A DNA stretch of 63,070 bases, filler included, from Octopus bimaculoides (lineage: Eukaryota): NCBI RefSeq assembly GCF_001194135.2. It is 5 parts of 5 records of this genome, joined end to end, with 100 filler letters (N's around TTAATTAATTAA, not from the genome) between each part and the next. Parts side by side here need not be neighbours in the genome. Positions count along the whole stretch, not along the records: positions 28,534 to 55,426 come from NC_068981.1; 4 more parts are not named here. The stretch is one strand, 5' to 3'. Shown in pieces: positions 28,776 to 54,422 of this stretch. The translations under genes were made by a program, and so were the position numbers. Each line of letters opens with the position of its first letter. Position 1 is the first letter of the stretch. Under the pieces are notes generated by a model. It made no database searches. It was not told where the DNA came from and saw only the letters and a program-made list of their open reading frames with translations.

Positions 28776-29379
28776 GATCATTGTTGCTGTTTAATCCCGT
28801 GTTGGCTTTGAATAAAGCAGGCATTTTGATGAATGCCATTAATATTATGAACATTCTGCAGTCAGAGCATCAGCCTCATTATCAAAAGGAGACGGTCTGT
28901 TTTGTTATGGTTGCTGTTGTCGCTGTTGCTGCTGCTGCTGCTGCTGTTGCTGTCGTCATCATCTTGGTGTTGCCTTTGAATCTGACTCCACCGAATATAC
29001 CAATAACCATGGATATTCCAGCCTCGACCATCCCATCGTATTGCATGTATATCAGAAACTGTATTATCCGATGTATATTTTTCAAGTCGGTAGAATGTAA
29101 CTTGACTGAAATTTGGCTGCTTGTTTTAGCAAATCGAGCAACAACGTAGAGGCTCCCTCGCTGGTGAACAATAAAATAGAAATAGCGGATTTGGTGGGTA
29201 TTGGTTTTAATCTGTAATTTTTTTTTTTAAGCAGGTTTCTGGGTTGTTAAAATGGAGTTGGAATAGCGTCTGCCATCTCTATACTTAATTTCAGGTGTGA
29301 GTACAGCCTAAAATTACTACAATGTGTAACACGATTTTTGTCCTTGGATAGCAACTGTTATTTTCTATTTGCTTACCTA

Positions 29380-29600
29380 TAAGATGCATGAAAAATGGCT
29401 AATATTTCCTTCAAACTTTGCTTTTGTTACAAACTCCAAAGAATCGACCTCAACACATAGCTATGATGCTCCCCCACTACTCATGCTCATGATCAGAGAT
29501 GCACATATCGTCAGTCACCAAGGGACATGCTCAAGTAGTTAAGGCAAAGCAACTGACGAGCAAATCTGTGGTATTGAGCAGAATATTTGTTATAACATTA
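29380..29600 (-). mobile_element. SINE/retroposon family C copy
   Basis: gatgctcccccactactcatgctcatgatcagagatgcacatatcgtcag...aagcaactgacgagcaaatctgtggtatt. Confidence 0.8.
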
Positions 29601-31213
29601 TTTCTGCTTCAGTAACTCAATTCTGAATCTGTCTGAAATGTATTGGAAAATAAGTCAGTTTCAAAACATTGATGTCCAGATTATAAAAGCAAAGTTTGGA
29701 GGGAATAGTAGTGATTTCCTTTGATTTCTGGCCAAAGACAGAAAAAAAAACCCATTTTGTTTCACAGTGTTATATTCTGGCAACTTGAGCACTTACATAG
29801 TTCCGTGGACCGTATTCTAATGTTAATGCAGCATGATGTTTGCGAAGATCTTTGCACTTCAATATTCGGCTCATGTCTCAAATTGTATATCTTGCAGGTG
29901 CAACTGGTGAATTCCAAATTGTCGCTTAGAGCTGTTGGAAGCCTGTACTAGTCAACTTTGGAATTTGCTCCAAACAAAAGTAAAATACACCTGCCTAATA
30001 TACATCGTATGATTCACAAGAGTAACTCTTCTGTGTGTGCACCACATCATATCTGGCGATATTCACATCTATGCTTTTCCCTGACATCACACAAAATGCT
30101 ACCATGAAGACGAAAAAGAAAAAAAAAAACAACCTCAAAGCAGGTCCTATTTAAATAGGACGAACAATGTACCTAACTCTTGAAAGGCAGACATGTAGCG
30201 TTCACGTTTGATCATTTATTGGAAAGCCTTCATCTATCCTGTCCCAAAGTTTCCATTTACATTATTACAGCCGGAGAACCAATGAAATCCAACCAGGGAT
30301 GACGTCACATTAAAGCCAAACTGACTACGAAGGAAGTTACTATCAAGAGTGCAGACTTCGTCATCACAACCGGTGGAGAAGAGGAGGGGCACAATAAACT
30401 TCTGTGGACATCACATACTGATAATGAGTATACCAATGATCATACTTTTTTTTTATAACCACAGCCGGTAGAATTGTTGTGGAGGGATGTTGATGTTGAC
30501 TAAAAGCTTCTGGGCATATTCTGCATGCAAATGTAACCGAGTATTCCACTTATTCGTGGCTACAATGGGGTCCCGGTAAATGTATTACCTTCACAATGTC
30601 AGAATTCTCTAAAAATGCATTGTTATCTTTTATTTTTTATCTTTTACTTCTTTCAGTCATAACCCTAACCAACCAACACCGTTGTCAAGAGGTAGTGGGG
30701 GTACAAACGCATACACCAAGACACACACATACACACACTATGTATATATCGGGCGGTTGAGGCACAACGAAGAGTTTTTACTGCATTTTTGACTTTGAGA
30801 AAAGATACATTTTTTACAAATGTTCACCACCTTACAAAAACTATACCAACTAATGAAATGATTCTTGTATACACCCGCTAAATACTTCTGCCAAGTATAA
30901 AATAGTTACTCCACAAATGACTCTTTATTCTCGCCTGAGCTGTCAGACTACTTTCCACTGGGTTGGCCGCTTCTGATTTATGTTGTCTGGTTGAATTTTG
31001 ATGATTTATATTCCTTTGGCAGCACAATGGTTTTTTATTTTATTTTATTCTTGATGATTATTTTTAGGTATATGTTACAAAATAGATCTCCCTTGCTCAT
31101 TGTTATGATATTGAGGCTCCTTCGTTGCTGTGTACTGTATCCTATATCGGCGATTGTGGTGTTGGCGAATTTTGCTTCGTTGAAATGATACTACGAGATA
31201 TTTTTGTCTGCTA

Positions 31214-33764: not shown

Positions 33765-34048
33765 TATGTATGTATGTGTGCGTGTGTGCGTGTGTGTGTG
33801 TGTGTGTATGTATGTATGTGTATGTATGTATGTGTGTATGTATGTATGCAAGCATGTATGTATGCATGTACGTATGTATGTGTGTATGTATGTATTATGT
33901 ATGTACGTATGCATGTAAGCACATATGCATGTATGTGTGCGTGTGTATGTGTGTGTGTGTGCGTGTGTGTGTGTATGTATGTATGTATGCGTGTGTATGT
34001 ATGTATGTGTGTATGTATGTGTGCAAGCATGTATGTATGCATGTACGT
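33765..34048. repeat. Compound (TG)/(TATG)/(TGCA) microsatellite, continuing into a gap
   Basis: Seen directly. Confidence 0.9.
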
Positions 34049-35816
34049 NNNNNNNNNNNNNNNNNNNNNNNNNNNNNNNNNNNNNNNNNNNNNNNNNNNN
34101 NNNNNNNNNNNNNNNNNNNNNNNNNNNNNNNNNNNNNNNNNNNNNNNNNNNNNNNNNNNNNNNNNNNNNNNNNNNNNNNNNNNNNNNNNNNNNNNNNNNN
34201 NNNNNNNNNNNNNNNNNNNNNNNNNNNNNNNNNNNNNNNNNNNNNNNNNNNNNNNNNNNNNNNNNNNNNNNNNNNNNNNNNNNNNNNNNNNNNNNNNNNN
34301 NNNNNNNNNNNNNNNNNNNNNNNNNNNNNNNNNNNNNNNNNNNNNNNNNNNNNNNNNNNNNNNNNNNNNNNNNNNNNNNNNNNNNNNNNNNNNNNNNNNN
34401 NNNNNNNNNNNNNNNNNNNNNNNNNNNNNNNNNNNNNNNNNNNNNNNNNNNNNNNNNNNNNNNNNNNNNNNNNNNNNNNNNNNNNNNNNNNNNNNNNNNN
34501 NNNNNNNNNNNNNNNNNNNNNNNNNNNNNNNNNNNNNNNNNNNNNNNNNNNNNNNNNNNNNNNNNNNNNNNNNNNNNNNNNNNNNNNNNNNNNNNNNNNN
34601 NNNNNNNNNNNNNNNNNNNNNNNNNNNNNNNNNNNNNNNNNNNNNNNNNNNNNNNNNNNNNNNNNNNNNNNNNNNNNNNNNNNNNNNNNNNNNNNNNNNN
34701 NNNNNNNNNNNNNNNNNNNNNNNNNNNNNNNNNNNNNNNNNNNNNNNNNNNNNNNNNNNNNNNNNNNNNNNNNNNNNNNNNNNNNNNNNNNNNNNNNNNN
34801 NNNNNNNNNNNNNNNNNNNNNNNNNNNNNNNNNNNNNNNNNNNNNNNNNNNNNNNNNNNNNNNNNNNNNNNNNNNNNNNNNNNNNNNNNNNNNNNNNNNN
34901 NNNNNNNNNNNNNNNNNNNNNNNNNNACACACACACACACAGGGGCCATAGTAGGGGGCACTTTCCCAAGATTCAGCACATCGAGACTGAACCTGAAGCA
35001 CAAGGTTGCAAGGCGTGCTTCTTAACTACACAGCCAAGCCATACTTATAACTCTATTAACTCTTTTCTTTTTCCTTTTCCCTCTAAAACGGTAACACAAC
35101 GTTCTCTTGAAGATAGAATTCAAGTAGTCATCTCAATTACGAAATTTGAAAATGATAGCGGAGTTGTGCGACAGCAAAAGAATTTACCACCACCAATCCA
35201 CTAGACTGTCAAACCACCAGTGTTGTTTATTTTGGATTTATTTTAGGTTTAGGGAATGTTGCCAAAAGCTCAGTCAGATCATAATTAGCTGGTGAAAAAT
35301 CTCTTAATATTGTCGACAAACTTGTCGTGGCAACTCATTCAATGTCAGTTTGTAGTTATGCTGCAGCTAAAGGAATGAGTCCGAGCTCATTTTACCACCT
35401 ACTTCTAATGGTCTAATAATAAAATAAATGTTAGTCAAGCTGGTTTGAGTAGTGCTTCAAGTATTCATCCTCGAGGCATTACTTATGAAACATCAAATAT
35501 GTGAAATAACTTTTCTTTTGTAGAGGGTGTGGAGGGAACAGGGTATCTCGAAGCATACATAAGGCTATAAATAATGGCATGTAAATATTGGACCGAAGAA
35601 CCATTTTGGATAGAAAGAGTCGAAGGCTATTCCGTCCTATATCTTTTTCGACGTATTATTTACATGCTATTCTTTATAGCTTTATGTGTGTATCGAGATC
35701 AACTGTCAAAAAAAAAAAAAAGGAAAAAAACAATTATGTCGCGTTCTCTCGAAAGTTCATAAATTTTTATGGCATCAACAACATCAGATATGTGTGTGTG
35801 TGTAGGTAGGTAGATA

Positions 35817-36076
35817 ATACATACATACATACATACATGCATGCATGCATACATACATGCATACATGCATGCATGCATACATACATACATACATACATAC
35901 ATACATACATACATACATGCATGCATACATGCATACATACATACATACATACATGCATACATACATGCATACATGCATACATGCATATATACATACATGC
36001 ATACATACATGCATACATGCATACATATATGCATACATACATACATACATGCATACATACATACACACATACATAC
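35817..36076. repeat. Compound (CATA)n/(CATG)n tetranucleotide array
   Basis: Seen directly; source of the MYVC/HTYI pseudo-ORFs. Confidence 0.95.
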
Positions 36077-36344
36077 AATGTATTTTCAAATTCCGAGTAG
36101 ACTGTAATGGAGGAGGCATATATCTTGTTTCATATTTAACTACGAAGTTTTAAAAAGTCATTCAGAAATAAATATGCTTTGAAGTAAACAATATTTATTA
36201 ACAGTTCATATAATTTTAGATATTTCAGCAAGTATAGGAGACAAGTACTAAACAATTTCGATACTATTATCAACTCATTAGTAAAGCATATCCTTATGGT
36301 TTGACGGGCAACATTTTTCATTAATGTTTTATGTAGTGTTTTTG

Positions 36345-37984: not shown

Positions 37985-38335
37985 ATTTCCAGTTGATCCA
38001 ATCAACGAAACAACCTGCTCGTGAAATTAATGTGCAAGTGGCTGAGCACTCCACAGACACGTGTACCCTCAACGTAGTTCTCGGGGATATTCAGCGTGAT
38101 ACAGTGTGACAAGGCTGACCTTTTGAATTACAGGCACAACAGAAACATGAAGTAAGAGTGAGAGAAAGTTGTGGTGAAAGAGTACAGCAGAGTTCGCCAC
38201 CATCCCTTGCTGGAACCTCGTCGAGCTTTAAGTGTTTTCGCTCAATAAACACTCATAACGCCCGGTCTAGGAACCGAAACCGCGATCCTATGACCACGAG
38301 TCCGCTGCCCTAACCACTGGGCCATTGCGCCTCCA
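37985..38335 (+). mobile_element. SINE family D copy
   Basis: ccagttgatccaatcaacgaaacaacctgctcgtgaaattaatgtgcaagtggctgagcactccacagacacgtgtaccctc...taaccactgggccattgcgcctccac. Confidence 0.8.
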
Positions 38336-38926: not shown

Positions 38927-39879
38927 CTCACTCACTCTTTTCCCACCTATCATATTCTGGATGCCCTACTGGGTCAAGAGTAGGAATACTGATAAGGTTT
39001 CTTATGTTTTACTCGCGCCTCTTAGAGTTCTGAAACAGTTAGCAAAAGCATGGTAGTAGCTACCAAGTTATATTCACTCGCAAATGACTGGATGTGGTTG
39101 TTTGTTTATAGTTTCAGCTTAGAGCTGCGGCCATGCTGATGCACCGCCGTGAGAGAAGTCAAGGAACTGCACACTAGTCTCTATGATGCCTGAAACAAAC
39201 AATAGAACACATCTCATTCTCTAAGTTAGGATCAACGAAGATAAGAATGAACGTGAATGTTAAATCCAGACTAGACTGCAACGGACCTCGTTACTTAACC
39301 GAATAAGTGGAAAAAAAAAAAAAAAGATTTCAACTGATAGATTACTTGATTTTCTTAGTTGTGAAATGCTTGTTATGTTGCTCTCAAACATTATTCCGCT
39401 TCTATTTTGCTGTTCTCTCCCCACCTCAAGAGCAAAACATTCCCACGCTACACTGATTTAATCACCCATCGACCATAATTTCACGTCACAGTCACCATAC
39501 TCACATCGTGTTACTTTAGTCTTCCGATGATAAACATCCATTTTTCGTTGTAAAAGAAGTGAAATAAATTCTACTAAAAAAATGGAGGTAAATTGCGATA
39601 GAAACCGGAAGTTGACGACAACCTCTTACTCACACGTACACTACTTGAATTACAGTGTAATAAATTTATTATTAATACATTTTTTGCGTCTTTGGTCAGT
39701 AAGTGTTATTTCCTATTTGCTTCTATCTAGAAATCAAAGAAAATTACTATTATTCTCTTCACACTTTGCCTTTCTGACCTGGACATCAATGTTTTCAAAC
39801 TGACCTATTTTCCATTACATTTCAGACAGATTCAGTGCTGAGTTGCTGAAGAAGAAATATCGTTATAACAGATACTACG

Positions 39880-40045
39880 CTCAATATCAGAGATTTGCTC
39901 GTCAGTTGCTTGACCTCGACCACTTGAGCATGTCCGTTAGTGACTGACAATATATGTACATCTTTGACGATGAACAGGAGTAGTGGGGGAGCATCATAGC
40001 CATGTGTTGAGGACGATTCTTTGGAGTTTGAATAAATGTACCGAA
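39880..40045 (+). mobile_element. SINE/retroposon family C partial copy
   Basis: cagagatttgctcgtcagttgcttgacctcgacc...gtagtgggggagcatcatagccatgtgttgag. Confidence 0.8.
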
Positions 40046-40124
40046 AGCAAAGTTTGAAGGAAATATTAGCCATTTTTCATACTTTCTAAGGATAAGCAAA
40101 TAAGAAATAACAGTTGCTACCCGA

Positions 40125-40440
40125 GGACAAAAATCGTGTTATAGAGTGTTGTTATTGGCAGAGTCAAATGGCTCTTCTCAAAATAAGGAATTGGCTCATA
40201 TTGTTGTTCCAAGTGAATCCACTGGAACAATTCCACTGTTTCCTGTTGGTTCTTTCTGCAACTCATTAATGGTGCAGGATTACTGCATTGCTCACATGCA
40301 ACTGCATTTGTTATCATGCATCTACATGCAAGCCACTGAATTACCTTCTTAGTAACGTTCTTTGCTGCATATAATGCGTTAAAATGTTGTACTTCAGCTA
40401 CTATTTCTGAAACATTTAATAGATCATTAGAATGGACAAT
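40125..40440 (-). mobile_element. Merlin / IS1595 (ISXO2)-type transposase N-terminal remnant
   Basis: VIQWLACRCMITNAVACEQCSNPAPLM ... FEKSHLTL..TTLY resembles the Merlin 'WL...GL..N...C..C...M.L ... SFFEKSHLTL' pattern. The 5' part of ORF 40117-40500 is SINE sequence. Confidence 0.55.
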
Positions 40441-40444
40441 ACAC

Positions 40445-40660
40445 GCAAGTCGGCAAGCTGGCAGAATCGTCAGCACGCTGGGCAAAATGCTTAGCAGCAT
40501 TTCGTCCGTCCTTCCATTCTGAGTTCAGATTCCACCGAAGTCGACTTTGCTTCTCATCTCTTTGGGGTCGATTAAATAAATGCCTGTTGAACACCGGGGT
40601 CGATGTAATCAACTTACATCTCCCTCAAAATTGATGGCTCTGAGCCAAAATGTGAAATCA
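40445..40660 (+). mobile_element. SINE family A, full length
   Basis: ggcaagctggcagaatcgtcagcacgctgggcaaaatgcttagcagcatttcgtccgtc...ggggtcgatgtaatcaacttac...gagccaaaatgtgaaatc. Confidence 0.85.
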
Positions 40661-40957
40661 ATGTACTATACACGTAAGTACCTGTGAACGTAGTGTAATG
40701 AGGAAATGAATTCTTTATGTTCTGTTTATAAAATTTTGGTGTGTCACTGTCGTTACTTTCAGCTTGTAACGCAATTGACTTCTATTTTTTAGGACAATTT
40801 ACTTTCACTTTTAACGATGACTAACTGAACGTTAACCCGCCCGATTCGACTGTCTAGAAATCCTTGTATTTAAAAGGGAGGTTGTTTTCAGTGTTACAAA
40901 TGCACGTATGCAAACCTGCACATTCAGTCATATGTGTGTGTGTACACACATACCTTG

Positions 40958-41016
<59 letters not shown>

Positions 41017-41450: not shown

Positions 41451-41725
41451 TGTTGTTGTTGTTGTTGCTGCTGCTGCTTATCTTCTCTAACTCTAAGTTA
41501 ACCCGTCAGGCAGATCTATGATCGAAGGCGTTCCGGCCATGACTATCCTATTTTTTACAATCATCGCTTAATCTCAGACTACATAATCCAGTATGTTTTA
41601 TAAGACGTTAGAGTGTGATACACGGGAGTCTTTCACCAGACTTTAGTGTCTGCGGGTGCTTCAGAATATTCTTGGCGGGCGCTAATTTGTAATAATGCTA
41701 AAGTGGAGTAAATCTGAGGGTGCAC

Positions 41726-41992
41726 TACTAGCGTAGCTAGAGGAGGGCGGAGGAGCGGAGGGGTAGGGTCCGCCCCGGACAGCCCTTTAATGGGGTCTGC
41801 TATAGGCTGTAAGCCTAAATAGTCTGTATTGAAATCAAATAACAACGGTTTTAATGTCAGCACACGGACACTACTCACAGTCACATGCAACAATCGATAT
41901 AGTCACTGTACAATATGTATATTTTGTGGGGTCCCGGGGGGCGACAAACTGAAGGGCCGCCCCGAGTGGCACACACTCTAGCTACATCACTG
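41726..41992. mobile_element. hAT-type MITE, 267 bp, with 8-bp TSD
   Basis: TIRs tactagcgtagctagag / ctctagctacatcactg (consensus CAGTGGCGTAGCTAGAG); TSD gggtgcac (41718-41725) / ggctgcac (41993-42000). Confidence 0.8.
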
Positions 41993-42344
41993 GGCTGCAC
42001 CATTGAATAATGAGGAGGCAGTGCCGTCCAGTGCACTCCCTTAACGACGAGCATGGCTTCCAGAAATAGTAGCCAAATCTCCCATAAGTCAAATTACATA
42101 GACCCATCGAACAAGTATTGTTGTTGTGCTAGTTTATCCAAATGACTGAAACGACGATAGCGTGGGGTACATTTGGTGTAGAACGTGTCCCTTACTACCC
42201 GGCTGGGTTGGCTGCTCGTGTTGGTCGTCTATATGCCACAAGGTCATGGCAGATGAGGAGATATTTCGCTGAGATGGAAACTAATTGGGACTCTGCTCTA
42301 CAAATCGCCCGGGAGGATCCGGAAATATACCGACGCATTATCTG

Positions 42345-42540
42345 TCATTAGACTGCGGCTATGCTGAAGCAACGTCTTGAATGATTTTTAGTCAAACAAA
42401 TCGACCACAGTACTTGTTTATTTAAAGCCTGGTATTTATTATATTGGTCCTTTTTGCCGAACCGCTAGTTTATGGGGACGTAAATACATTAACATCGGCT
42501 GTCAAACGATGGTGGGAAGGGGGACACAAAGACACGCATG
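42345..42540 (-). mobile_element. SINE family B 3' half
   Basis: gtcattagactgcggctatgctgaagcaac...ttttgccgaaccgctagtttatggggacgtaaatac. Confidence 0.8.
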
Positions 42541-43206: not shown

Positions 43207-43266
43207 ACTTTTGGACCATATAGATTACTTTTGGACCATATAGATTACTTTTGGACCATATAGATT
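43207..43266. repeat. 20-bp tandem repeat x3 (acttttggaccatatagatt)
   Basis: Three perfect units. Confidence 0.95.
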
Positions 43267-43538
43267 AAAACATGAGTTTTTTTCGTATGTTTTTAAAGAC
43301 TTTATCGATGTTTAGTGTTAAATATGAATCGTAGCAAGGTTTCACTATCTGGTAAAAGGTTTTCCTTGCAAGATCTACATGGAGGGTCAACCAGTCAAAA
43401 ATAGCAAATCGCTTCTTAATAGGGATTGAAAAGAAAGAGCATATTGGCCTATATTGTTGTGAGTACATTATGCCCGAAAAAAAAAAAATAAAAAATAAAA
43501 AATAAAAAAATTAACCATCGTGGCTTAAGTACCTTTCG

Positions 43539-44160: not shown

Positions 44161-45130
44161 TGTGACGTCCGTGCGAAGCGAGGTGATGAAAATGGCTCCT
44201 TAGTACATCACACGGTAGATACAATAAATATAAATAGAACAATGCATATATGTGCCAGAGGGAAATAAGAGACACAACTGGATAGAATGTTTAAGAGAAG
44301 ATTTATTGGTATGTTAACATGCGTGATTGTGTGTGCATCATATATGCAGAATAATAGATAGGCCGTCATAAGAATAATATGTATGCGTGTGTATGTAGGC
44401 ATAGACGTATGCGTGTGTATGTAGGCATAGACGTATGCGTGTTAAGAACATACAAGGATGACGATGAAGAAGAGACAGTGAAAGAGTCTATAGCCATCGA
44501 AGTGAGGAGTAAGTTCATAGACACAAGAATGATAAACATCAGTTCGTAGTTAATTGTACATAATAGTTAAAATACTGTATCAAGAAGTTGTGGCGAAGAT
44601 GCAGAGCCGGTTGCAGTACGTGTTGTACGTGAAGTTGTGGCTGTGATGCTACTACCTAGGTCACTTGGTACAGGAGTTCTCGCAGGTTGTATATTCGCTG
44701 TTGATCCATGGTGAAGTAATTCACGAACAGTGCAGTGTTGTAACCAGCGCGAGTACGTAGAGAGATGTTGACGTTAGGACGAATGGTGACGACGGAGATG
44801 GAGCTCGCTGAATGCCATTGGACGAAATTGGTGAGTCTCTACGTGGCTACTGTTATGTTGTCGCTGGAACTGGCGGTGTCTTGTGTGGTCAGTGGCCAGA
44901 CCTTAAAAGGTCTGGAACCGAAAGACATCGAGACGAGGAGAAGCTAGGGTTTTTATAAGGAGTTGTAGGCTCAAAGCTGAGTAGAAAACAGGCTGTCACA
45001 CGTGACCTTATTTGAAGGCTGCGATTGGTTGGGTTGCATATTGGCGCGAATAGAGCAAGAGACAAATTGCGCCAATACCAACCAATCAGAGTAGTGGACA
45101 CAACAGGGTCCAAAAATGCGGCTAAAGGCT
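44161..45130 (-). mobile_element. Solo-LTR-like unit, copy 1 (promoter end at right; inner boundary uncertain, about 45130-45290)
   Basis: Inverted homologue of 45675-46648. Minus-strand end ...cttcgcacggacgtcACA; four CCAAT/ATTGG boxes, CACGTG at 44999 and TATAAAA (minus) at 44951-44957. Confidence 0.65.
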
Positions 45131-45674
45131 AGCTCCTTTCTGGTTGCTATTCTTTCTTTTTATTTGATTATCTTATTGTTTCTTAAACTTTCTTCCCTAA
45201 CGATTTATTTTTACTGATTGAATTTTCTCACGACCGTCTTTCATTATAATAAAATTCAATAGGTTATAAATAGATATAACCCACGTGTGATTATATGAAG
45301 CATAAAAATACTGTAAAGAAAAGTGACTCACATAGTACAAAACAATGTAGATATAAATCTACACAAAACTGTATTAATAGCAAAAATATCTATAAATATC
45401 TTCAGTGGAATGAGCGTGCTTGTTTCTTTCGACATAATACGTCCTACTGTAGTTTGAAGTTTGTTACTAATGGAAGGGGCATTCAAGCCTACAGCAAGCT
45501 AGGGAGAGTGACACTGATGGGCGAGCAAGCGGACGATTATATGAGCGAGATCAGAAGGTTGGATGTAAGCAGGGTTTACGGAGTAGAGATGGTGTGGATT
45601 GTGAAGTTGGCTTTTGTGACCAGATTCCCTGATTATATCTGTAGCGTACGACTTTAGGGAAATTCCTCTCTTTC

Positions 45675-46648
45675 TGTTATATAAACGTAAATACGGACGT
45701 AGTAGATAACAGCTAACTTTCGTCCGCCTGTTTGGACCCTGCTGTGTCCACTACTCTGATTGGTTGGTATTGGCGCAATTTGTCTCTTGCTCTATTGCGG
45801 GCCAATATGCAACCCAACCAATGGCAGCCTTTAGATAAGGTCACATGAGATAGTCTCTTCTAAACTTCCGGTGAGTCGACTGCATGCTATAAAACTTCAG
45901 CGACACAGCGAGTCGATGTCTTTCGGTTTCAGACCTTTTGAGGTCTAGCCACTGACCACAAAGCACACAACCAGTTCCAGCGACGACACAACAGCAACCA
46001 CATGGAGACTCATCAACACACTTCCAACAGCATACGGCAATCTCTTTCTTCATCGCCTCCATCTTCTTGACGCCAACATCATCTCTCTACGTACACACCA
46101 ACCAGCAACGCTCGCACAGGTTTCAATCTCCACACTGTTTGTGAATTACTTCACCATGGTTAACAGCAAATACAACCTGCGACAACCTTCTGTAACAAGA
46201 GACCGGCTCTGCATCGTAGCCACAACTTCTTATACGACAGTACCTCAACCGGCTCTGCATTACAGCCACAACTTCTTGATACAGCATCTCAGCTATCGTG
46301 TACACTGACTGCGAACTGGTATTTATCATCCTTGTGTCTGAACATTCTTCTAACGTCATATTATAGACTCTTTCAATGCTCTGTACTTATCGCACACGCA
46401 TGCATTCATGTTTGTACACACATACTTTGTATACATGACGGCCTGTTTATTATTATGTTCATATGATGCATACACAGACACATGTTAGCCTATATATAAA
46501 AATCTTCTCTTAAACATTCTACCCGGTTGTGTCTCTCTTTTTCTTCTGGCACTTATATTCTTTATCCTTTTCATATTTTATTTGTATCGACCGTGCGCTG
46601 TACTAAAGGAGCCATTCTCGTCACCCTTCCTTCGCACGGTCGTTTACA
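45675..46648 (+). mobile_element. Solo-LTR-like unit, copy 2, 974 bp, TGT...ACA
   Basis: Starts TGTTATATA and ends cttcgcacggtcgtttACA. Flanks tttc / tatc could be a 4-bp TSD with one mismatch. CCAAT boxes, TATAAAA at 45888; no long ORF. Confidence 0.65.
45737..45894 (+). promoter_or_regulatory. Pol II promoter core: 2 ATTGG + 2 CCAAT, GGTCACATG (USF/E-box-like), ACTTCCGGT (ETS), TATAAAA
   Basis: Motifs read directly at about 45739-45822, 45839-45847, 45864-45872 and 45888-45894; mirrored in copy 1 except the ETS site. Confidence 0.55.
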
Positions 46649-50439: not shown

Positions 50440-51170
50440 TACTGGGTGCTAAATTTGCATGAAGAGGTTCCGGATCTTTATGTTCTGAGTTCGAATTCCG
50501 GTGAGGTCAACTTCGACTTTCATCTTTTCGGAGTCGATAAAATATAATACCAACCAAATGGTGACATCTTTACTTGTTATTGGTGTGTGGGATGGTGTTT
50601 TAGTGTCGGATGTCGATTATATAAGCGTATATGATCTTATTTTACTGGGTGGTGCTTATGTGTGGGTTAAGTTATATTCAGTAGAATGTGTTGTGTGAAT
50701 AAGAAAAACAATAATAATAGTAATTGCTGTTATTATTATGGCGGCGAACTGGCAGAATAGCTACTGCGCCAGACAAATTGCTTAGAAGCATTTCGTCAGT
50801 CTTTATGTTCTGAGTTCAAATACCACCGAGGTCGACTTTGCGTTCCATCCTTTTGGGATTGATAAATTAAGTACCAGTTGTGGACTCTGGGGTCGATGTA
50901 ATCGACAAGCCCCTCCCCAAATTTCAGGCCTTGTGCCTATTAGTAGAAAGGATAATCATTATCGTTGTTGTTAGGGTGGGGAGCTGGTAGAATCGTTAGA
51001 GAGCCGGAAAAACGCATTACGGTGTTTCTTGCAGTTCTTTACGTTCAGAATTCAAATCCAGCTAAGCTCAACTTTGTCTTCCATCCTTTTGAGGATCGAT
51101 AAAATACAGTACCAGTCAAGAAATGGGATCAATGATATCGCCTCCCTTCGAAATTGTTGTCGAGTGCTCA
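50440..51170 (+). mobile_element. Cluster of three SINE family A copies (~50440-50550 partial, ~50740-50955, ~50972-51170)
   Basis: Repeated atgttctgagttc(g/a)aat...gaggtc(a/g)act..., with ggcggcgaactggcagaat and ggggagctggtagaatcgttag heads. Confidence 0.85.
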
Positions 51171-53084: not shown

Positions 53085-53574
53085 CAACACTTGTATTCTA
53101 ATACATTGAAGAACTCTTCTTCTCATTTCGTCTATCTGTTGTACATTATGATAATTACTAATACTCGTTCCTTGATTTTCCACAAGGATACAGCTAAAGA
53201 AACATCAAAAGAACAAATTACAAAAATGGAGAGGATTTACATACAATTAATTATTATTCTGCGGCGTTTCTAAAACAGTCGCACGCTTCAAACCATTTTT
53301 TTCATATCATTTCAAAAAGGAATATAACATATCATTATTATTGAGATATCTTCAAAATGAACAGTTGCATAAACGCAGGGTGAAAGCAAAGTAAACCGTT
53401 GCACATTTTATACGATCAGTTCATTAAGGTGTCAAATGGAAAACGGAGAAATATTAGAGACAAAAATTGCTGTTCACCAGGAGCGTTCATATAATTTAGA
53501 TACATGGAAGTTAAGTTTCTTTTACGGGCGCAGACAGAAAACAAGGATGAAATAATTCTGTTCTTGTAAAGAAG

Positions 53575-53790
53575 GCAGCGAGTTGGCAGAATCGTTAGCA
53601 TGCCGGGCAATATGCTTAGCAGTATTTCATCCGTCTTAACGTTCTGCGTTCAAATCCCGCCGAGGTCAACTTTGCCCTTCATCCTTTCAGGGTCGATAAA
53701 TTAAGTACCAGTTGAGCGCTAGGGTCGATGTAAACGATTTACCTTCTTCCCCGAAATTACTGACCTTGTGCCAAAATGTGAAACCAATAT
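53575..53790 (+). mobile_element. SINE family A, full length, well preserved
   Basis: ggcagcgagttggcagaatcgttagcatgccgggcaatatgcttagc...ttcaaatcccgccgaggtcaactttgcc...ccttgtgccaaaatgtgaaacc. Confidence 0.9.
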
Positions 53791-54422
53791 ATGTTGTAAA
53801 GAATTGCTTTGTCTTATGTCTGGTACTGGAAAGAACAGGAAACAAAGATTCTTTTAGATAACGGCAAAAACTTCACTAACAATCTCAACAAAAAGATTTT
53901 GTAAGATTGCTTACTCTCTTTTCTATGTTTCTTAATGTTTAAATTTTATATCTCCCATTTGATATTGCTCCAAATCTGACTGATACTTTTATCTATCTAA
54001 CAACACTGCTTACATATAACGCATTATCTAAAAACCGTTCCTTGTCTCCGAAATGGTTACCAATTAAAACAACTTTCTGAGACAATTCGAAACTTATGGA
54101 GAGCAAAAAAAAAATAGAAGTGAAAAAGAAAATTATATAAAGAAACCAATTTGGCAGAAATATATGATGAAAATGTGTTACGTGTAATGCAGGAGAGGTT
54201 GTAAACGCTTCTATGAAATATTAGAAATATCTAAAGTGCAAAGATAGTCGTCTCGGGAAATCGGGGAAGTGGAAGAGATAAGAGAAGTTCAGACAGTTTA
54301 TTAGAAACTACAGTATTAAAATAGTAACATCGGCTTTTTTTTTTTTGTGTTTTCGTCTTAGCAAAAGCTGTTTGATTTACCGATTGATCCCGGAGTGTGA
54401 CAGCATTGTGAATATATAAATA

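What the first reader, a model, noticed from the sequence alone, without database searches (positions are those of the whole stretch)
44161..46648. Two ~1-kb LTR-like units arranged head-to-head as a large imperfect inverted repeat
44161-45130 is the reverse complement of about 45720-46648 along its whole length (by eye roughly 70-75% identical), with a ~550-600 bp unique spacer. The outer ends read TGT...ACA. Each arm has a promoter end facing the spacer and a C/A-rich downstream part, and no shared long ORF. Readings: (a) two related solo LTRs inserted back-to-back; (b) one fold-back or long-TIR element with TG..CA ends (no common TSD seen: gatt vs tatc); (c) an old inverted duplication of a non-coding gene. 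In any case it would be a bidirectional transcription unit. Read-through across both arms could form long dsRNA in a lineage with heavy A-to-I editing (inference). This is the strongest candidate for an undescribed system here.
Basis: partly seen in the sequence, partly recalled or inferred. Interest (0 to 1): 0.7.

Follow-up and report, generated by a model that had tools for sequence, protein, structure and literature searches.

The report
Old inverted pair of LTR-like units
Two diverged copies of a roughly 0.95-kb non-coding, promoter-to-poly(A) "LTR-like" unit sit head-to-head in octopus DNA; the repeat is real, but it looks like an old duplicated or mobile relic rather than a new system.

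Summary
Positions 44165-45134 are the reverse complement of 45711-46643 (73% identity with gaps, 77% without, E about 1e-154), separated by a 576-bp unique spacer. No symmetry continues into the spacer or the outer flanks.

Each arm, read outward from the spacer, has the anatomy of a self-contained RNA polymerase II unit:
- four CCAAT boxes arranged two plus two in opposite orientations
- ATAAGGTCACRTG
- TATAAAA
- a conserved start block with a 6-8-bp hairpin
- a G-poor body of about 600-650 nt with no shared reading frame
- a poly(A) hexamer followed by a GU-rich element
- a tail of about 120 bp ending in ACA

The arms are non-coding: 21 of 24 indels are not multiples of three, there is no codon periodicity, and no protein or Pfam match was found. 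The promoter module is 95% identical against 68.5% elsewhere.

The two outward RNAs would be paralogous, not complementary. Double-stranded RNA needs read-through from an outside promoter.

LTR hallmarks other than this internal anatomy were not found: no 5' TG, target-site duplication (TSD), primer-binding site (PBS) or gag-pol. Fold-back transposon, Penelope and coding-gene readings are disfavoured.

Copy number, synteny and expression could not be tested, because no octopus genome was reachable. The finding is ordinary to mildly interesting.

The parts
44165..45134 (-). Left arm: copy 1 of the ~0.95-kb unit; sense orientation is the minus strand, running leftward from the spacer
   Evidence: blastn 73% over 1000 columns, E 5e-154; global alignments; nhmmer score 1131
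45711..46643 (+). Right arm: copy 2 of the unit; sense orientation is the plus strand, running rightward from the spacer
   Evidence: nhmmer score 1084
45135..45710 (.). Unique 576-bp spacer with no internal symmetry. Its 125-codon open frame (45280-45654) has no Pfam or protein match
   Evidence: left half vs reverse complement of right half, z 1.8; Pfam none; 5.8-billion protein search none
45024..45086 (-). Left arm CCAAT module: 2 ATTGG plus 2 CCAAT in a near-palindromic arrangement (NF-Y-type boxes)
   Evidence: Together with its right-arm counterpart it is the only cluster of 3 or more boxes per 80 bp in the 23.7-kb piece. It lies in the block that is 108/114 identical between arms
45759..45822 (+). 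Right arm CCAAT module (2 ATTGG plus 2 CCAAT)
44999..45011 (-). Left arm ATAAGGTCACGTG: extended nuclear-receptor half-site (AAGGTCA) overlapping an E-box (CACGTG)
   Evidence: motif assignment from general knowledge of these sites, not tested
45835..45847 (+). Right arm ATAAGGTCACATG (same element, E-box weakened to CACATG)
44951..44957 (-). Left arm TATAAAA, 71 bp after the last CCAAT box
45888..45894 (+). Right arm TATAAAA, 70 bp after the last CCAAT box
44896..44931 (-). Left arm conserved start block TCGATGTCTTTCGGTT (begins 26 nt after the first T of TATA), followed by hairpin CCAGACCT-TTTA-AGGTCTGG
   Evidence: hairpin present in the MFE and centroid folds
45913..45948 (+). Right arm conserved start block and hairpin AGACCT-TTTG-AGGTCT (6 bp; the two outer pairs seen in the left arm are lost)
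44706..44732 (-). Left arm block CACTGTTCGTGAATTACTTCACCATGG (Kozak-like ATG), followed by only a 17-codon ORF
   Evidence: 26/27 identical between arms; the ORFs after it differ
46133..46159 (+). Right arm block CACTGTTTGTGAATTACTTCACCATGG, followed by a 50-codon ORF with no homologue
46202..46277 (+). Right arm internal tandem duplication (about 46-nt period; ACCGGCTCTGCAT...GCCACAACTTCTT twice). The left arm has the same at 44582-44649, so it predates the split of the arms
   Evidence: (D4, I5, I8, I10)
44268..44307 (-). Left arm putative 3'-end signal: AATAAA (44302-44307), a 21-nt block identical in both arms, then GU-rich GTTGTGTCTCT (44268-44278)
   Evidence: about 37/39 identical between arms; function inferred from the canonical metazoan poly(A)-site layout
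46495..46536 (+). Right arm putative 3'-end signal: variant hexamer TATAAA (46495-46500), the same 21-nt block, then GTTGTGTCTCT (46526-46536)
44381..44442 (.). Perfect 26-nt x 2.4 tandem repeat found only in the left arm; it accounts for the 44-column gap in the alignment
   Evidence: (D1)

Best explanation
This is an old head-to-head (inverted) pair of copies of one ~0.95-kb non-coding unit. The unit has the anatomy of a long terminal repeat, which is also the anatomy of a self-contained RNA polymerase II transcription unit.

Anatomy of each copy, reading outward from the spacer:
- an enhancer-promoter: four CCAAT boxes, an AAGGTCA/E-box element and a TATA box
- a conserved start region with a short hairpin
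- a G-poor, unstructured body of about 600-650 nt with no reading frame
- a poly(A) hexamer followed by a GU-rich element
- a tail of about 120 bp ending in ...ACA

Most likely origin: two relic solo-LTR-type repeats, or a local inverted duplication of one such repeat. The arms split roughly 40-55 million years ago and have since mostly decayed. Only the ~114-bp CCAAT/promoter module has stayed nearly identical, either through constraint or through arm-to-arm gene conversion.

How it would work: if the promoters still fire, they fire away from each other and give two paralogous, same-sense RNAs, not complementary ones. A long imperfect RNA hairpin forms only if an outside promoter reads through both arms.

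Shown: the repeat, the motif anatomy, the lack of coding capacity, and the uneven conservation. Inferred: promoter activity, RNA ends, mobile origin, and age.
For: - Repeat and sharp boundaries. Homology does not continue into the spacer or the outer flanks.
- Promoter anatomy at the same spacing in both arms: ATTGG x2, CCAAT x2, ATAAGGTCACRTG, and TATAAAA 70/71 bp after the last CCAAT. Within the 23.7-kb piece the CCAAT cluster occurs only in the two arms.
- Conservation resumes 26 nt after the first T of TATA with an identical 16-mer plus hairpin.
- The only poly(A)-type hexamer downstream of the start in each arm lies at the homologous position. It is followed by a block that is about 37/39 identical and contains a GU-rich element.
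- Non-coding: only 3 of 24 gap runs are multiples of three and there is no codon-phase bias. ORFs differ between arms. No Pfam domain. No hit in 5.8 billion proteins for all six frames of both arms, nor in 1.84 billion representatives for the longest sense frame.
- Uneven identity: chi-square p 3e-4. The promoter block is 108/114 identical against 68.5% outside the blocks.
- Age: JC distance 0.27 overall and 0.41 outside the blocks. On the published octopus repeat clock, JC 0.12 corresponds to 33 My (the LTR burst) and JC 0.2 to 56 My (PMC13282606).
- Octopus origin: a dispersed repeat at 38094-38252 matches an O. bimaculoides gene model at 88%. Octopus genomes are reported to be about 66% repeats (PMC13282606, abstract).
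Against: - LTR hallmarks beyond the internal anatomy are missing. The upstream homology boundary (AGCTA...) has no TG, and the nearest TG lies 18-25 bp inside.
- No target-site duplication flanks either arm or the whole unit.
- There is no primer-binding-site-like TGG after the ACA ends. Only the left arm has a short purine run (AGAAAGGAG) abutting its start.
- No gag/pol remnant in the spacer, the flanks or the 18 kb around the repeat.
- The R-like segment (about 600 nt) is unusually long relative to the U3-like segment (about 200 nt).
- No third copy or fragment in the other ~21 kb of the piece.
- Two independent insertions within 600 bp are unlikely a priori.
- A single duplication followed by purely neutral decay does not explain the 95%-identical promoter block.
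Confidence: 0.5

Rival explanations
1. Host non-coding gene pair. A local inverted duplication of a ~0.6-kb intronless, polyadenylated long non-coding RNA gene together with its NF-Y/TATA promoter. Both copies are kept by selection and transcribed divergently.
For: - Complete promoter-to-poly(A) anatomy in both arms.
- Conservation is concentrated in functional-looking modules: promoter 108/114, start and hairpin about 45/49, ATG block 26/27, poly(A) block about 37/39, against 68.5% background.
- No transposon hallmarks: no TSD, PBS or gag-pol.
- No other copy nearby.
Against: - Outside the promoter block the heterogeneity is only marginal (my recount of the bins gives p about 0.04), so one gene-conversion tract could explain most of the signal.
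- Neither RNA has a significant fold (z -0.5 and -1.2).
- The hairpin shows no compensatory change, and the right arm has simply lost two pairs.
- There is no evidence of expression or of orthologues.
Confidence: 0.25
2. One composite element or hairpin-RNA locus. The whole 2.5 kb is a single fold-back or long-TIR element, or a hairpin-RNA locus. Its read-through transcript folds into a long imperfect duplex that feeds Dicer or ADAR.
For: - A read-through RNA of either strand would fold arm on arm: MFE -1246 (plus strand) and -1200 (minus strand) kcal/mol against -676 for shuffles.
- That fold has 741-777 inter-arm pairs and uninterrupted helices up to 54-62 bp.
- The outer ends read TGT...ACA.
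- Pairing of nearby inverted repeats is the conventional way of forming long dsRNA substrates for A-to-I editing (PMC9989829).
Against: - No TSD around the unit, and no transposase or any coding remnant in the spacer.
- The outer termini (about 81% over the last 43 columns) are less conserved than the inner ends (95%).
- The only promoter-like elements point outward, so neither reads through the other arm.
- The arms are old and mismatched (77%), whereas editing mainly targets young repeats.
Confidence: 0.1
3. Decayed protein-coding gene pair. The arms are two pseudogenised copies of a small intronless gene: a 222-243-nt G-poor leader, then a perfect Kozak ATG (CACCATGG), then a short ORF.
For: - The 27-nt block ending in ACCATGG is 26/27 identical between arms.
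- It lies 243 nt (right arm) and 222 nt (left arm) into the predicted RNAs.
- The first indels after the ATG sum to three, so YNLR is shared in frame.
Against: - ORFs of 50 and 17 codons that diverge at once, and 7 frame-breaking indels downstream.
- No codon periodicity.
- No homologue in 5.8 billion or 1.84 billion proteins, and no Pfam domain.
Confidence: 0.07
4. Penelope-like or DIRS-like retroelement remnant. In both families the terminal repeats can lie in inverted orientation.
For: - Penelope-like elements are abundant in octopus and had a burst at JC 0.2 (PMC13282606).
- Their pseudo-LTRs can be inverted (general knowledge).
Against: - No hammerhead ribozyme: Rfam at E up to 1 gives none, and the core pattern CTGANGA...GAAA is absent from the whole window.
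- No RT, GIY-YIG or tyrosine-recombinase remnant.
- DIRS terminal repeats carry inward-facing promoters, whereas here both face outward.
Confidence: 0.04

Closest known systems
Solo LTRs of LTR retrotransposons (U3-R-U5)
   Same: A unit of about 1 kb with sharp boundaries. It has upstream CCAAT and TATA promoter elements, a conserved start region with a hairpin, and a poly(A) signal with a GU-rich element. A short tail ends in CA. The unit is non-coding. The per-arm divergence (JC about 0.14-0.2) falls in the range of the published octopus LTR and Penelope/LINE bursts.
   Different: No TG at the upstream boundary, and no terminal inverted repeat beyond TGT/ACA-type triplets. There is no target-site duplication and no adjacent PBS, PPT or gag-pol. 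The R-like part is about 600 nt against a U3-like part of about 200 nt. Copy number is unknown.
Hairpin-RNA (hpRNA) loci of Drosophila and young plant MIRNA genes made by inverted duplication
   Same: Two inverted arms of about 1 kb with a short spacer. A read-through RNA would fold into a long imperfect duplex.
   Different: Those loci are transcribed across both arms from one upstream promoter, and their arms are usually far more similar. Here the only promoter-like elements sit inside the arms and fire outward, and the arms are 77% identical. No target gene is known.
Divergent (head-to-head) paralogous gene pairs, e.g. the inverted Hsp70Aa/Ab pair of Drosophila
   Same: Inverted duplication of a promoter plus its transcription unit, with CCAAT/TATA promoters facing away from each other across a short spacer. 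The leader before a Kozak-type ATG is G-poor and unstructured.
   Different: No conserved reading frame and no homologue. Each unit is only about 0.6 kb.
Large genomic palindromes with arm-to-arm gene conversion (e.g. primate Y-chromosome palindromes)
   Same: Inverted arms separated by a unique spacer. A stretch of much higher arm-to-arm identity (95% over 114 bp) could be a conversion tract.
   Different: Far smaller, and far more diverged overall. The high-identity stretch coincides exactly with a promoter-like module, which fits constraint equally well.
Penelope-like element pseudo-LTR pairs
   Same: Promoter-bearing terminal repeats that can lie in inverted orientation. The family is abundant in octopus.
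   Different: No hammerhead ribozyme motif and no RT/GIY-YIG ORF next to either arm.

Membership tests
LTR (solo LTR of an LTR retrotransposon) | Internal U3-R-U5 layout: promoter/TATA upstream, transcription start, poly(A) signal, short U5 | tested here: met
   At motif level only. CCAAT x4, TATAAAA, a conserved start block, AATAAA/TATAAA and a GU-rich element lie at homologous positions in both arms.
LTR (solo LTR of an LTR retrotransposon) | 5'-TG...CA-3' termini with a short terminal inverted repeat | tested here: inconclusive
   Both units end in ...ACA (44161-44163 on the opposite strand; 46646-46648). The upstream homology boundary reads AGCTA..., with no TG; the nearest TG is 18-25 bp inside. 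Boundaries are uncertain at 77% identity.
LTR (solo LTR of an LTR retrotransposon) | 4-6-bp target-site duplication flanking each copy | tested here: not met
   No matching flanks for either arm at any plausible boundary. At this age a TSD could have decayed (inference).
LTR (solo LTR of an LTR retrotransposon) | Some copies joined to PBS/PPT and gag-pol; many dispersed copies | not testable with these tools
   Locally there is no PBS, only a short purine run beside the left arm, and no gag-pol remnant. No third copy in 23.7 kb. No octopus genome or repeat library was reachable.
Fold-back / long-TIR DNA transposon | Target-site duplication around the whole element | tested here: not met
   Flanks are gatt / tatc, and there is no repeat at alternative boundaries 44141 / 46668.
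Fold-back / long-TIR DNA transposon | Outer termini are the conserved, functional part of the TIR; transposase in autonomous copies | tested here: inconclusive
   The outer 43 columns are about 81% identical, against 95% for the inner 114. The spacer encodes nothing recognisable. Autonomous relatives could not be searched for.
Hairpin-RNA / ADAR-substrate inverted repeat | Arms able to form a long RNA duplex | tested here: met
   MFE -1246 against -676 kcal/mol for shuffles; helices up to 54-62 bp.
Hairpin-RNA / ADAR-substrate inverted repeat | One transcript spanning both arms; derived small RNAs or clustered A-to-I sites | not testable with these tools
   No expression data. The intrinsic promoter-like elements point outward, which argues against self-driven read-through.
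Penelope-like element pseudo-LTR | Hammerhead ribozyme motif in the repeat; adjacent RT + GIY-YIG ORF | tested here: not met
   No hammerhead family in Rfam at E up to 1. The core pattern is absent from the window. No RT/EN remnant.
Divergent paralogous gene pair | Two outward-facing promoters, each with its own transcription unit | tested here: met
   At motif level only. Transcription itself is not testable here.
Divergent paralogous gene pair | Conserved product (ORF or structured RNA) in both copies | tested here: not met
   No shared ORF and no homologues. RNA folds are not better than shuffles. No Rfam family.

The most novel reading that the evidence does not exclude
The pair is a selectively maintained octopod locus: two divergently transcribed, G-poor ~0.6-kb non-coding RNA genes driven by near-identical NF-Y/TATA promoters. 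When read through from a host gene, their inverted arrangement also yields a ~1-kb imperfect RNA hairpin that is processed into small RNAs or hyper-edited by ADAR.
Probability: 0.1. Interest if true: 0.5.

Novelty: new member of a known kind. Interest (0 to 1): 0.25.

Why it matters
As it stands this is a well-delimited example of an old inverted pair of promoter-bearing non-coding repeats in an octopus genome. It is useful for repeat annotation and as a candidate bidirectional promoter, but it is not a new kind of system. It would matter more in two cases. In the first, the pair proves to be single-copy and conserved across octopods, which would make it a lineage-specific non-coding gene pair whose promoter logic can be dissected. 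In the second, read-through hairpin RNA from it is edited or diced, which would give a concrete substrate in a lineage known for heavy A-to-I editing.

Tried and rejected
**Searches that found nothing**
- Rfam at E up to 1 over the whole piece gave nothing in the arms. The only hits were sub-threshold mir-297/mir-466-type matches to CA/TG microsatellites elsewhere.
- No tRNA genes.
- A composite six-frame query of both arms against 5.8 billion proteins gave no hit.
- The same approach on 37.4-55.4 kb outside the arms gave one hit. It is a repeat-derived stretch of an O. bimaculoides dynein gene model, which names the taxon but not the locus.
- The same approach on the spacer and immediate flanks gave no hit.
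- Pfam on the ten longest open frames gave none.
- The 119-codon sense frame of the right arm gave 0 hits against 1.84 billion representatives.
- An attempt to fetch octopus DNA through the one protein hit found no record.
- Exact-pattern scans of the metagenome and viral collections with three conserved blocks gave 0 matches.
- An nhmmer profile of the two arms against the rest of the piece found no third copy.
- Tests for symmetry continuing into the spacer or outer flanks were negative.

**Readings rejected**
- Penelope-type reading: no hammerhead core pattern.
- Coding reading: no codon periodicity and the indel lengths do not fit a frame.
- CpG-island reading: CpG observed/expected is 0.9-1.0 in the arms against 0.81 for the piece, which is not distinctive.
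- Structured-RNA reading: single-arm folds are not better than shuffles. One of three short-fold requests failed on length.
- Assembly-artefact reading: the 23% divergence between arms rules it out.
Full report

Yes. blastn of the left arm against the reverse complement of the right arm gives one alignment, 44165-45134 vs 46643-45711. It spans 1000 columns at 73% identity with 97 gap columns, E about 5e-154. The repeat finder splits the same pair into 13 collinear inverted blocks of 70-96%.

A global alignment has 724 matches in 1036 columns, or 77.1% over ungapped columns, with 126 transitions and 89 transversions. The unique spacer is 45135-45710 (576 bp).

Homology stops sharply:
- The two halves of the spacer are not inverted copies of each other (z 1.8).
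- The 450-bp outer flanks, up to the N gaps, share nothing (z -0.1).

No third copy or fragment exists in the remaining ~21 kb of readable sequence (self-blast; nhmmer profile). With 23% divergence between the arms, an assembly artefact from collapsed haplotypes is excluded (inference).

**2. Where is it?**

The piece has 23,678 readable bases and five N gaps. It is 38% G+C and rich in microsatellites.

It holds no recognisable gene:
- no Pfam domain in the ten longest open frames
- no tRNA
- no Rfam family above noise

A composite six-frame query of 37.4-55.4 kb found a single protein, UniRef A0A0L8HIS0 of Octopus bimaculoides, a dynein-heavy-chain model. It is 88% identical over about 50 residues to 38094-38252 on the minus strand.

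That stretch is the non-dynein N-terminus of the model, so it is a dispersed repeat. It identifies the taxon as Octopus but does not identify the locus.

The inverted repeat therefore lies in intergenic or intronic, repeat-rich DNA.

**3. Anatomy of an arm**

Both arms were oriented outward from the spacer: left arm on the minus strand, right arm on the plus strand. They share the following features at homologous positions (right / left coordinates):

| Feature | Right arm | Left arm |
|---|---|---|
| First ATTGG | 45759 | 45082 |
| Second ATTGG | 45769 | 45072 |
| First CCAAT | 45802 | 45040 |
| Second CCAAT | 45818 | 45024 |
| ATAAGGTCACRTG (AAGGTCA half-site overlapping an E-box) | 45835-45847 | 44999-45011 |
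| TATAAAA, 70/71 bp after the last CCAAT | 45888-45894 | 44951-44957 |
| TCGATGTCTTTCGGTT, identical 16-mer starting 26 nt after the first T of TATA | 45913-45928 | 44916-44931 |
| Hairpin AGACCT-TTTR-AGGTCT (8 bp in the left arm, 6 bp in the right) | 45929-45948 | 44896-44915 |
| C/A-rich stretch (C+A 0.63-0.69) | 45949-46130 | 44734-44896 |
| CACTGTTYGTGAATTACTTCACCATGG (26/27 identical) | 46133-46159 | 44706-44732 |
| Internal ~46-nt tandem duplication | 46202-46277 | 44582-44649 |
| Variable microsatellite zone | about 46393-46422 | includes a perfect 26-nt x 2.4 array at 44381-44442 (left arm only) |
| Only poly(A)-type hexamer downstream of the start | TATAAA 46495-46500 | AATAAA 44302-44307 |
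| Identical 21-mer AATCTTCTCTTAAACATTCTA | 46501-46521 | 44283-44303 |
| GU-rich GTTGTGTCTCT | 46526-46536 | 44268-44278 |
| About 120 more bp ending in ...TTCGCACGG(N7-9)ACA | to 46648 | to 44161 |

The two ATTGG and two CCAAT boxes form a near-palindromic module. A cluster of three or more such boxes per 80 bp occurs nowhere else in the piece.

The hexamer, 21-mer and GU-rich element follow the standard metazoan poly(A)-site layout of hexamer, cleavage zone and GU-rich element (established knowledge).

The predicted RNAs are about 600 nt (right) and 640 nt (left). Both have the same striking composition: A 0.28, C 0.29, G 0.14, T 0.29. This layout is equally that of an LTR (U3-R-U5) and of a small intronless polymerase II gene.

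**4. Coding or structured?**

Neither. The evidence against coding:
- Only 3 of 24 indel runs are multiples of three, and no ungapped block shows a codon-phase bias in mismatches.
- The ORFs that follow the Kozak-like ATG are 50 codons (right) and 17 codons (left) and diverge at once.
- All six frames of both arms have no relative among 5.8 billion proteins.
- The 119-codon sense frame of the right arm has none among 1.84 billion representatives scored without a word filter.

The evidence against a structured RNA:
- Each predicted RNA folds no better than its shuffles (z -0.46 and -1.18).
- The 5' hairpin is the only shared structure. It shows no compensatory change, and the right arm has simply lost the two outer pairs.

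**5. Conservation pattern and age**

Identity is uneven (chi-square over 50-column bins, p 3e-4). The block from TTTGGACCC through the CCAAT module to AAGGTCAC is 108/114 identical (binomial P 3e-7 at the mean rate). Within it, 64 of 65 consecutive columns match. Outside the conserved blocks identity is 68.5%.

Shorter blocks stand out less strongly:
- start block plus hairpin, about 45/49
- ATG block, 26/27
- poly(A) block, about 37/39

With the promoter bins removed, my recount of the bins gives only marginal heterogeneity (p about 0.04). The robust signal is therefore the promoter module. It fits three scenarios:
- purifying selection on both copies
- selection at the level of a mobile-element lineage, if the arms are independent insertions
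- one arm-to-arm gene-conversion tract near the centre of the palindrome

These cannot be separated without orthologues.

The Jukes-Cantor distance between arms is 0.27 overall and 0.41 outside the blocks, which is 0.14-0.20 per arm. On the clock used for octopus repeats, JC 0.09 is about 25 My, JC 0.12 is about 33 My (the LTR burst) and JC 0.2 is about 56 My (the Penelope/LINE burst) (PMC13282606). That places the split of the arms at roughly 40-55 My. This is before or around the O. vulgaris / O. bimaculoides divergence of 13-33 My given in the same paper. The age estimate is an inference.

**6. What the arrangement can and cannot do**

The promoter-like ends abut the spacer, so transcription driven by them runs outward. 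The two RNAs would have the same sense and be paralogous, not complementary. The divergent unit therefore makes no double-stranded RNA by itself.

A transcript reading through both arms from an outside promoter would fold arm on arm:
- MFE -1246 (plus strand) and -1200 (minus strand) kcal/mol, against -676 +/- 8 for shuffles
- 741-777 inter-arm pairs
- uninterrupted helices up to 54-62 bp

That is enough in principle for ADAR or Dicer. [quoted passage not shown] These arms are old. No expression data could be consulted.

**7. Comparison with known kinds**

*LTR.* The internal layout is met. The 3' CA is met. The 5' TG is not at the homology boundary (AGCTA...). No TSD was found, and there is no PBS-like TGG after the ACA. 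Only a short purine run (AGAAAGGAG) lies beside the left arm. No gag-pol remnant was found. The R-like segment is unusually long. Copy number is untestable. The unit is therefore LTR-like in how it would work, but membership is unproven.

*Fold-back or long-TIR transposon.* No TSD and no transposase. The outer termini (about 81%) are less conserved than the inner ends. This reading is disfavoured.

*Penelope-like pseudo-LTRs* (which can be inverted and are abundant in octopus). No hammerhead motif and no RT/GIY-YIG. Rejected.

*DIRS-type inverted repeats.* Their promoters face inward, whereas here both face outward, and there is no recombinase or RT. Rejected.

*hpRNA locus.* Duplex potential is met, but promoter geometry argues against it. 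The rest is untestable.

*Divergent paralogous gene pair.* The geometry is met, but there is no conserved product.

**8. Verdict**

The dsRNA and 'undescribed system' ideas are not supported by anything in the sequence.

My best reading (confidence about 0.5) is an old inverted pair of relic LTR-type, promoter-bearing non-coding repeats. They arose either as two insertions or as a local inverted duplication of one. Since then they have largely decayed, except for a promoter module kept by constraint or gene conversion.

The main rival (about 0.25) is a host non-coding gene pair under selection.

Everything decisive needs an octopus genome and transcriptome: genome-wide copy number, synteny in other octopods, CAGE and RNA-seq, small RNAs and editing. 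None of these was reachable with the tools here.

Noticed in passing
window 40440-40670, 50700-50940, 50960-51120, 53535-53795 (all + strand): Four copies (70% mean column identity) of a ~210-bp dispersed repeat. Its head looks tRNA-derived: TGGCAGAATCG is box-A-like and GAGTTCAAATCCC is box-B-like. It is probably one of the abundant octopus SINEs. ARAGORN calls no tRNA there.
   Followed up: partly
window 38094-38252 (-): This stretch is 88% identical at protein level to the first ~80 residues of the O. bimaculoides dynein-heavy-chain model A0A0L8HIS0. Those residues precede the dynein domains. It looks like a dispersed repeat that was annotated as a first coding exon of that gene model.
   Followed up: partly
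window 29312-29729 and 39729-40156: A second, unrelated inverted pair: 428 bp at 84% identity, about 10 kb apart. It has no protein or Pfam match and is probably two copies of another unclassified repeat family.
   Followed up: no
window 43207-43267: Three perfect head-to-tail copies of a 20-nt unit (ACTTTTGGACCATATAGATT), about 900 bp left of the left arm.
   Followed up: no
window 44381-44442: A perfect 26-nt x 2.4 tandem array (GTATGCGTGTGTATGTAGGCATAGAC) inside the left arm only. It is a recent expansion that accounts for the largest gap between the arms.
   Followed up: yes
window 33770-34045, 35790-36120, 40930-41000: Long CA/TG- and CATA-type microsatellite tracts give many sub-threshold Rfam hits (mir-297, mir-466, mir-3149 and others). 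All are below the gathering scores, so these are composition artefacts, not miRNA genes.
   Followed up: yes
window 41500-42500: A local G+C rise (0.45-0.49 against 0.38) with protein-like open frames on both strands, for example 42133-42348 (+) and 41636-42093 (-). They have no Pfam or database match, and their origin is unknown.
   Followed up: partly
window 45913-46522 (+) and 44282-44931 (-): The sense strands of both predicted RNAs have an identical, strongly G-poor composition (A .28, C .29, G .14, T .29) despite 23% divergence. The asymmetry is therefore either maintained or inherited from the ancestral unit.
   Followed up: partly
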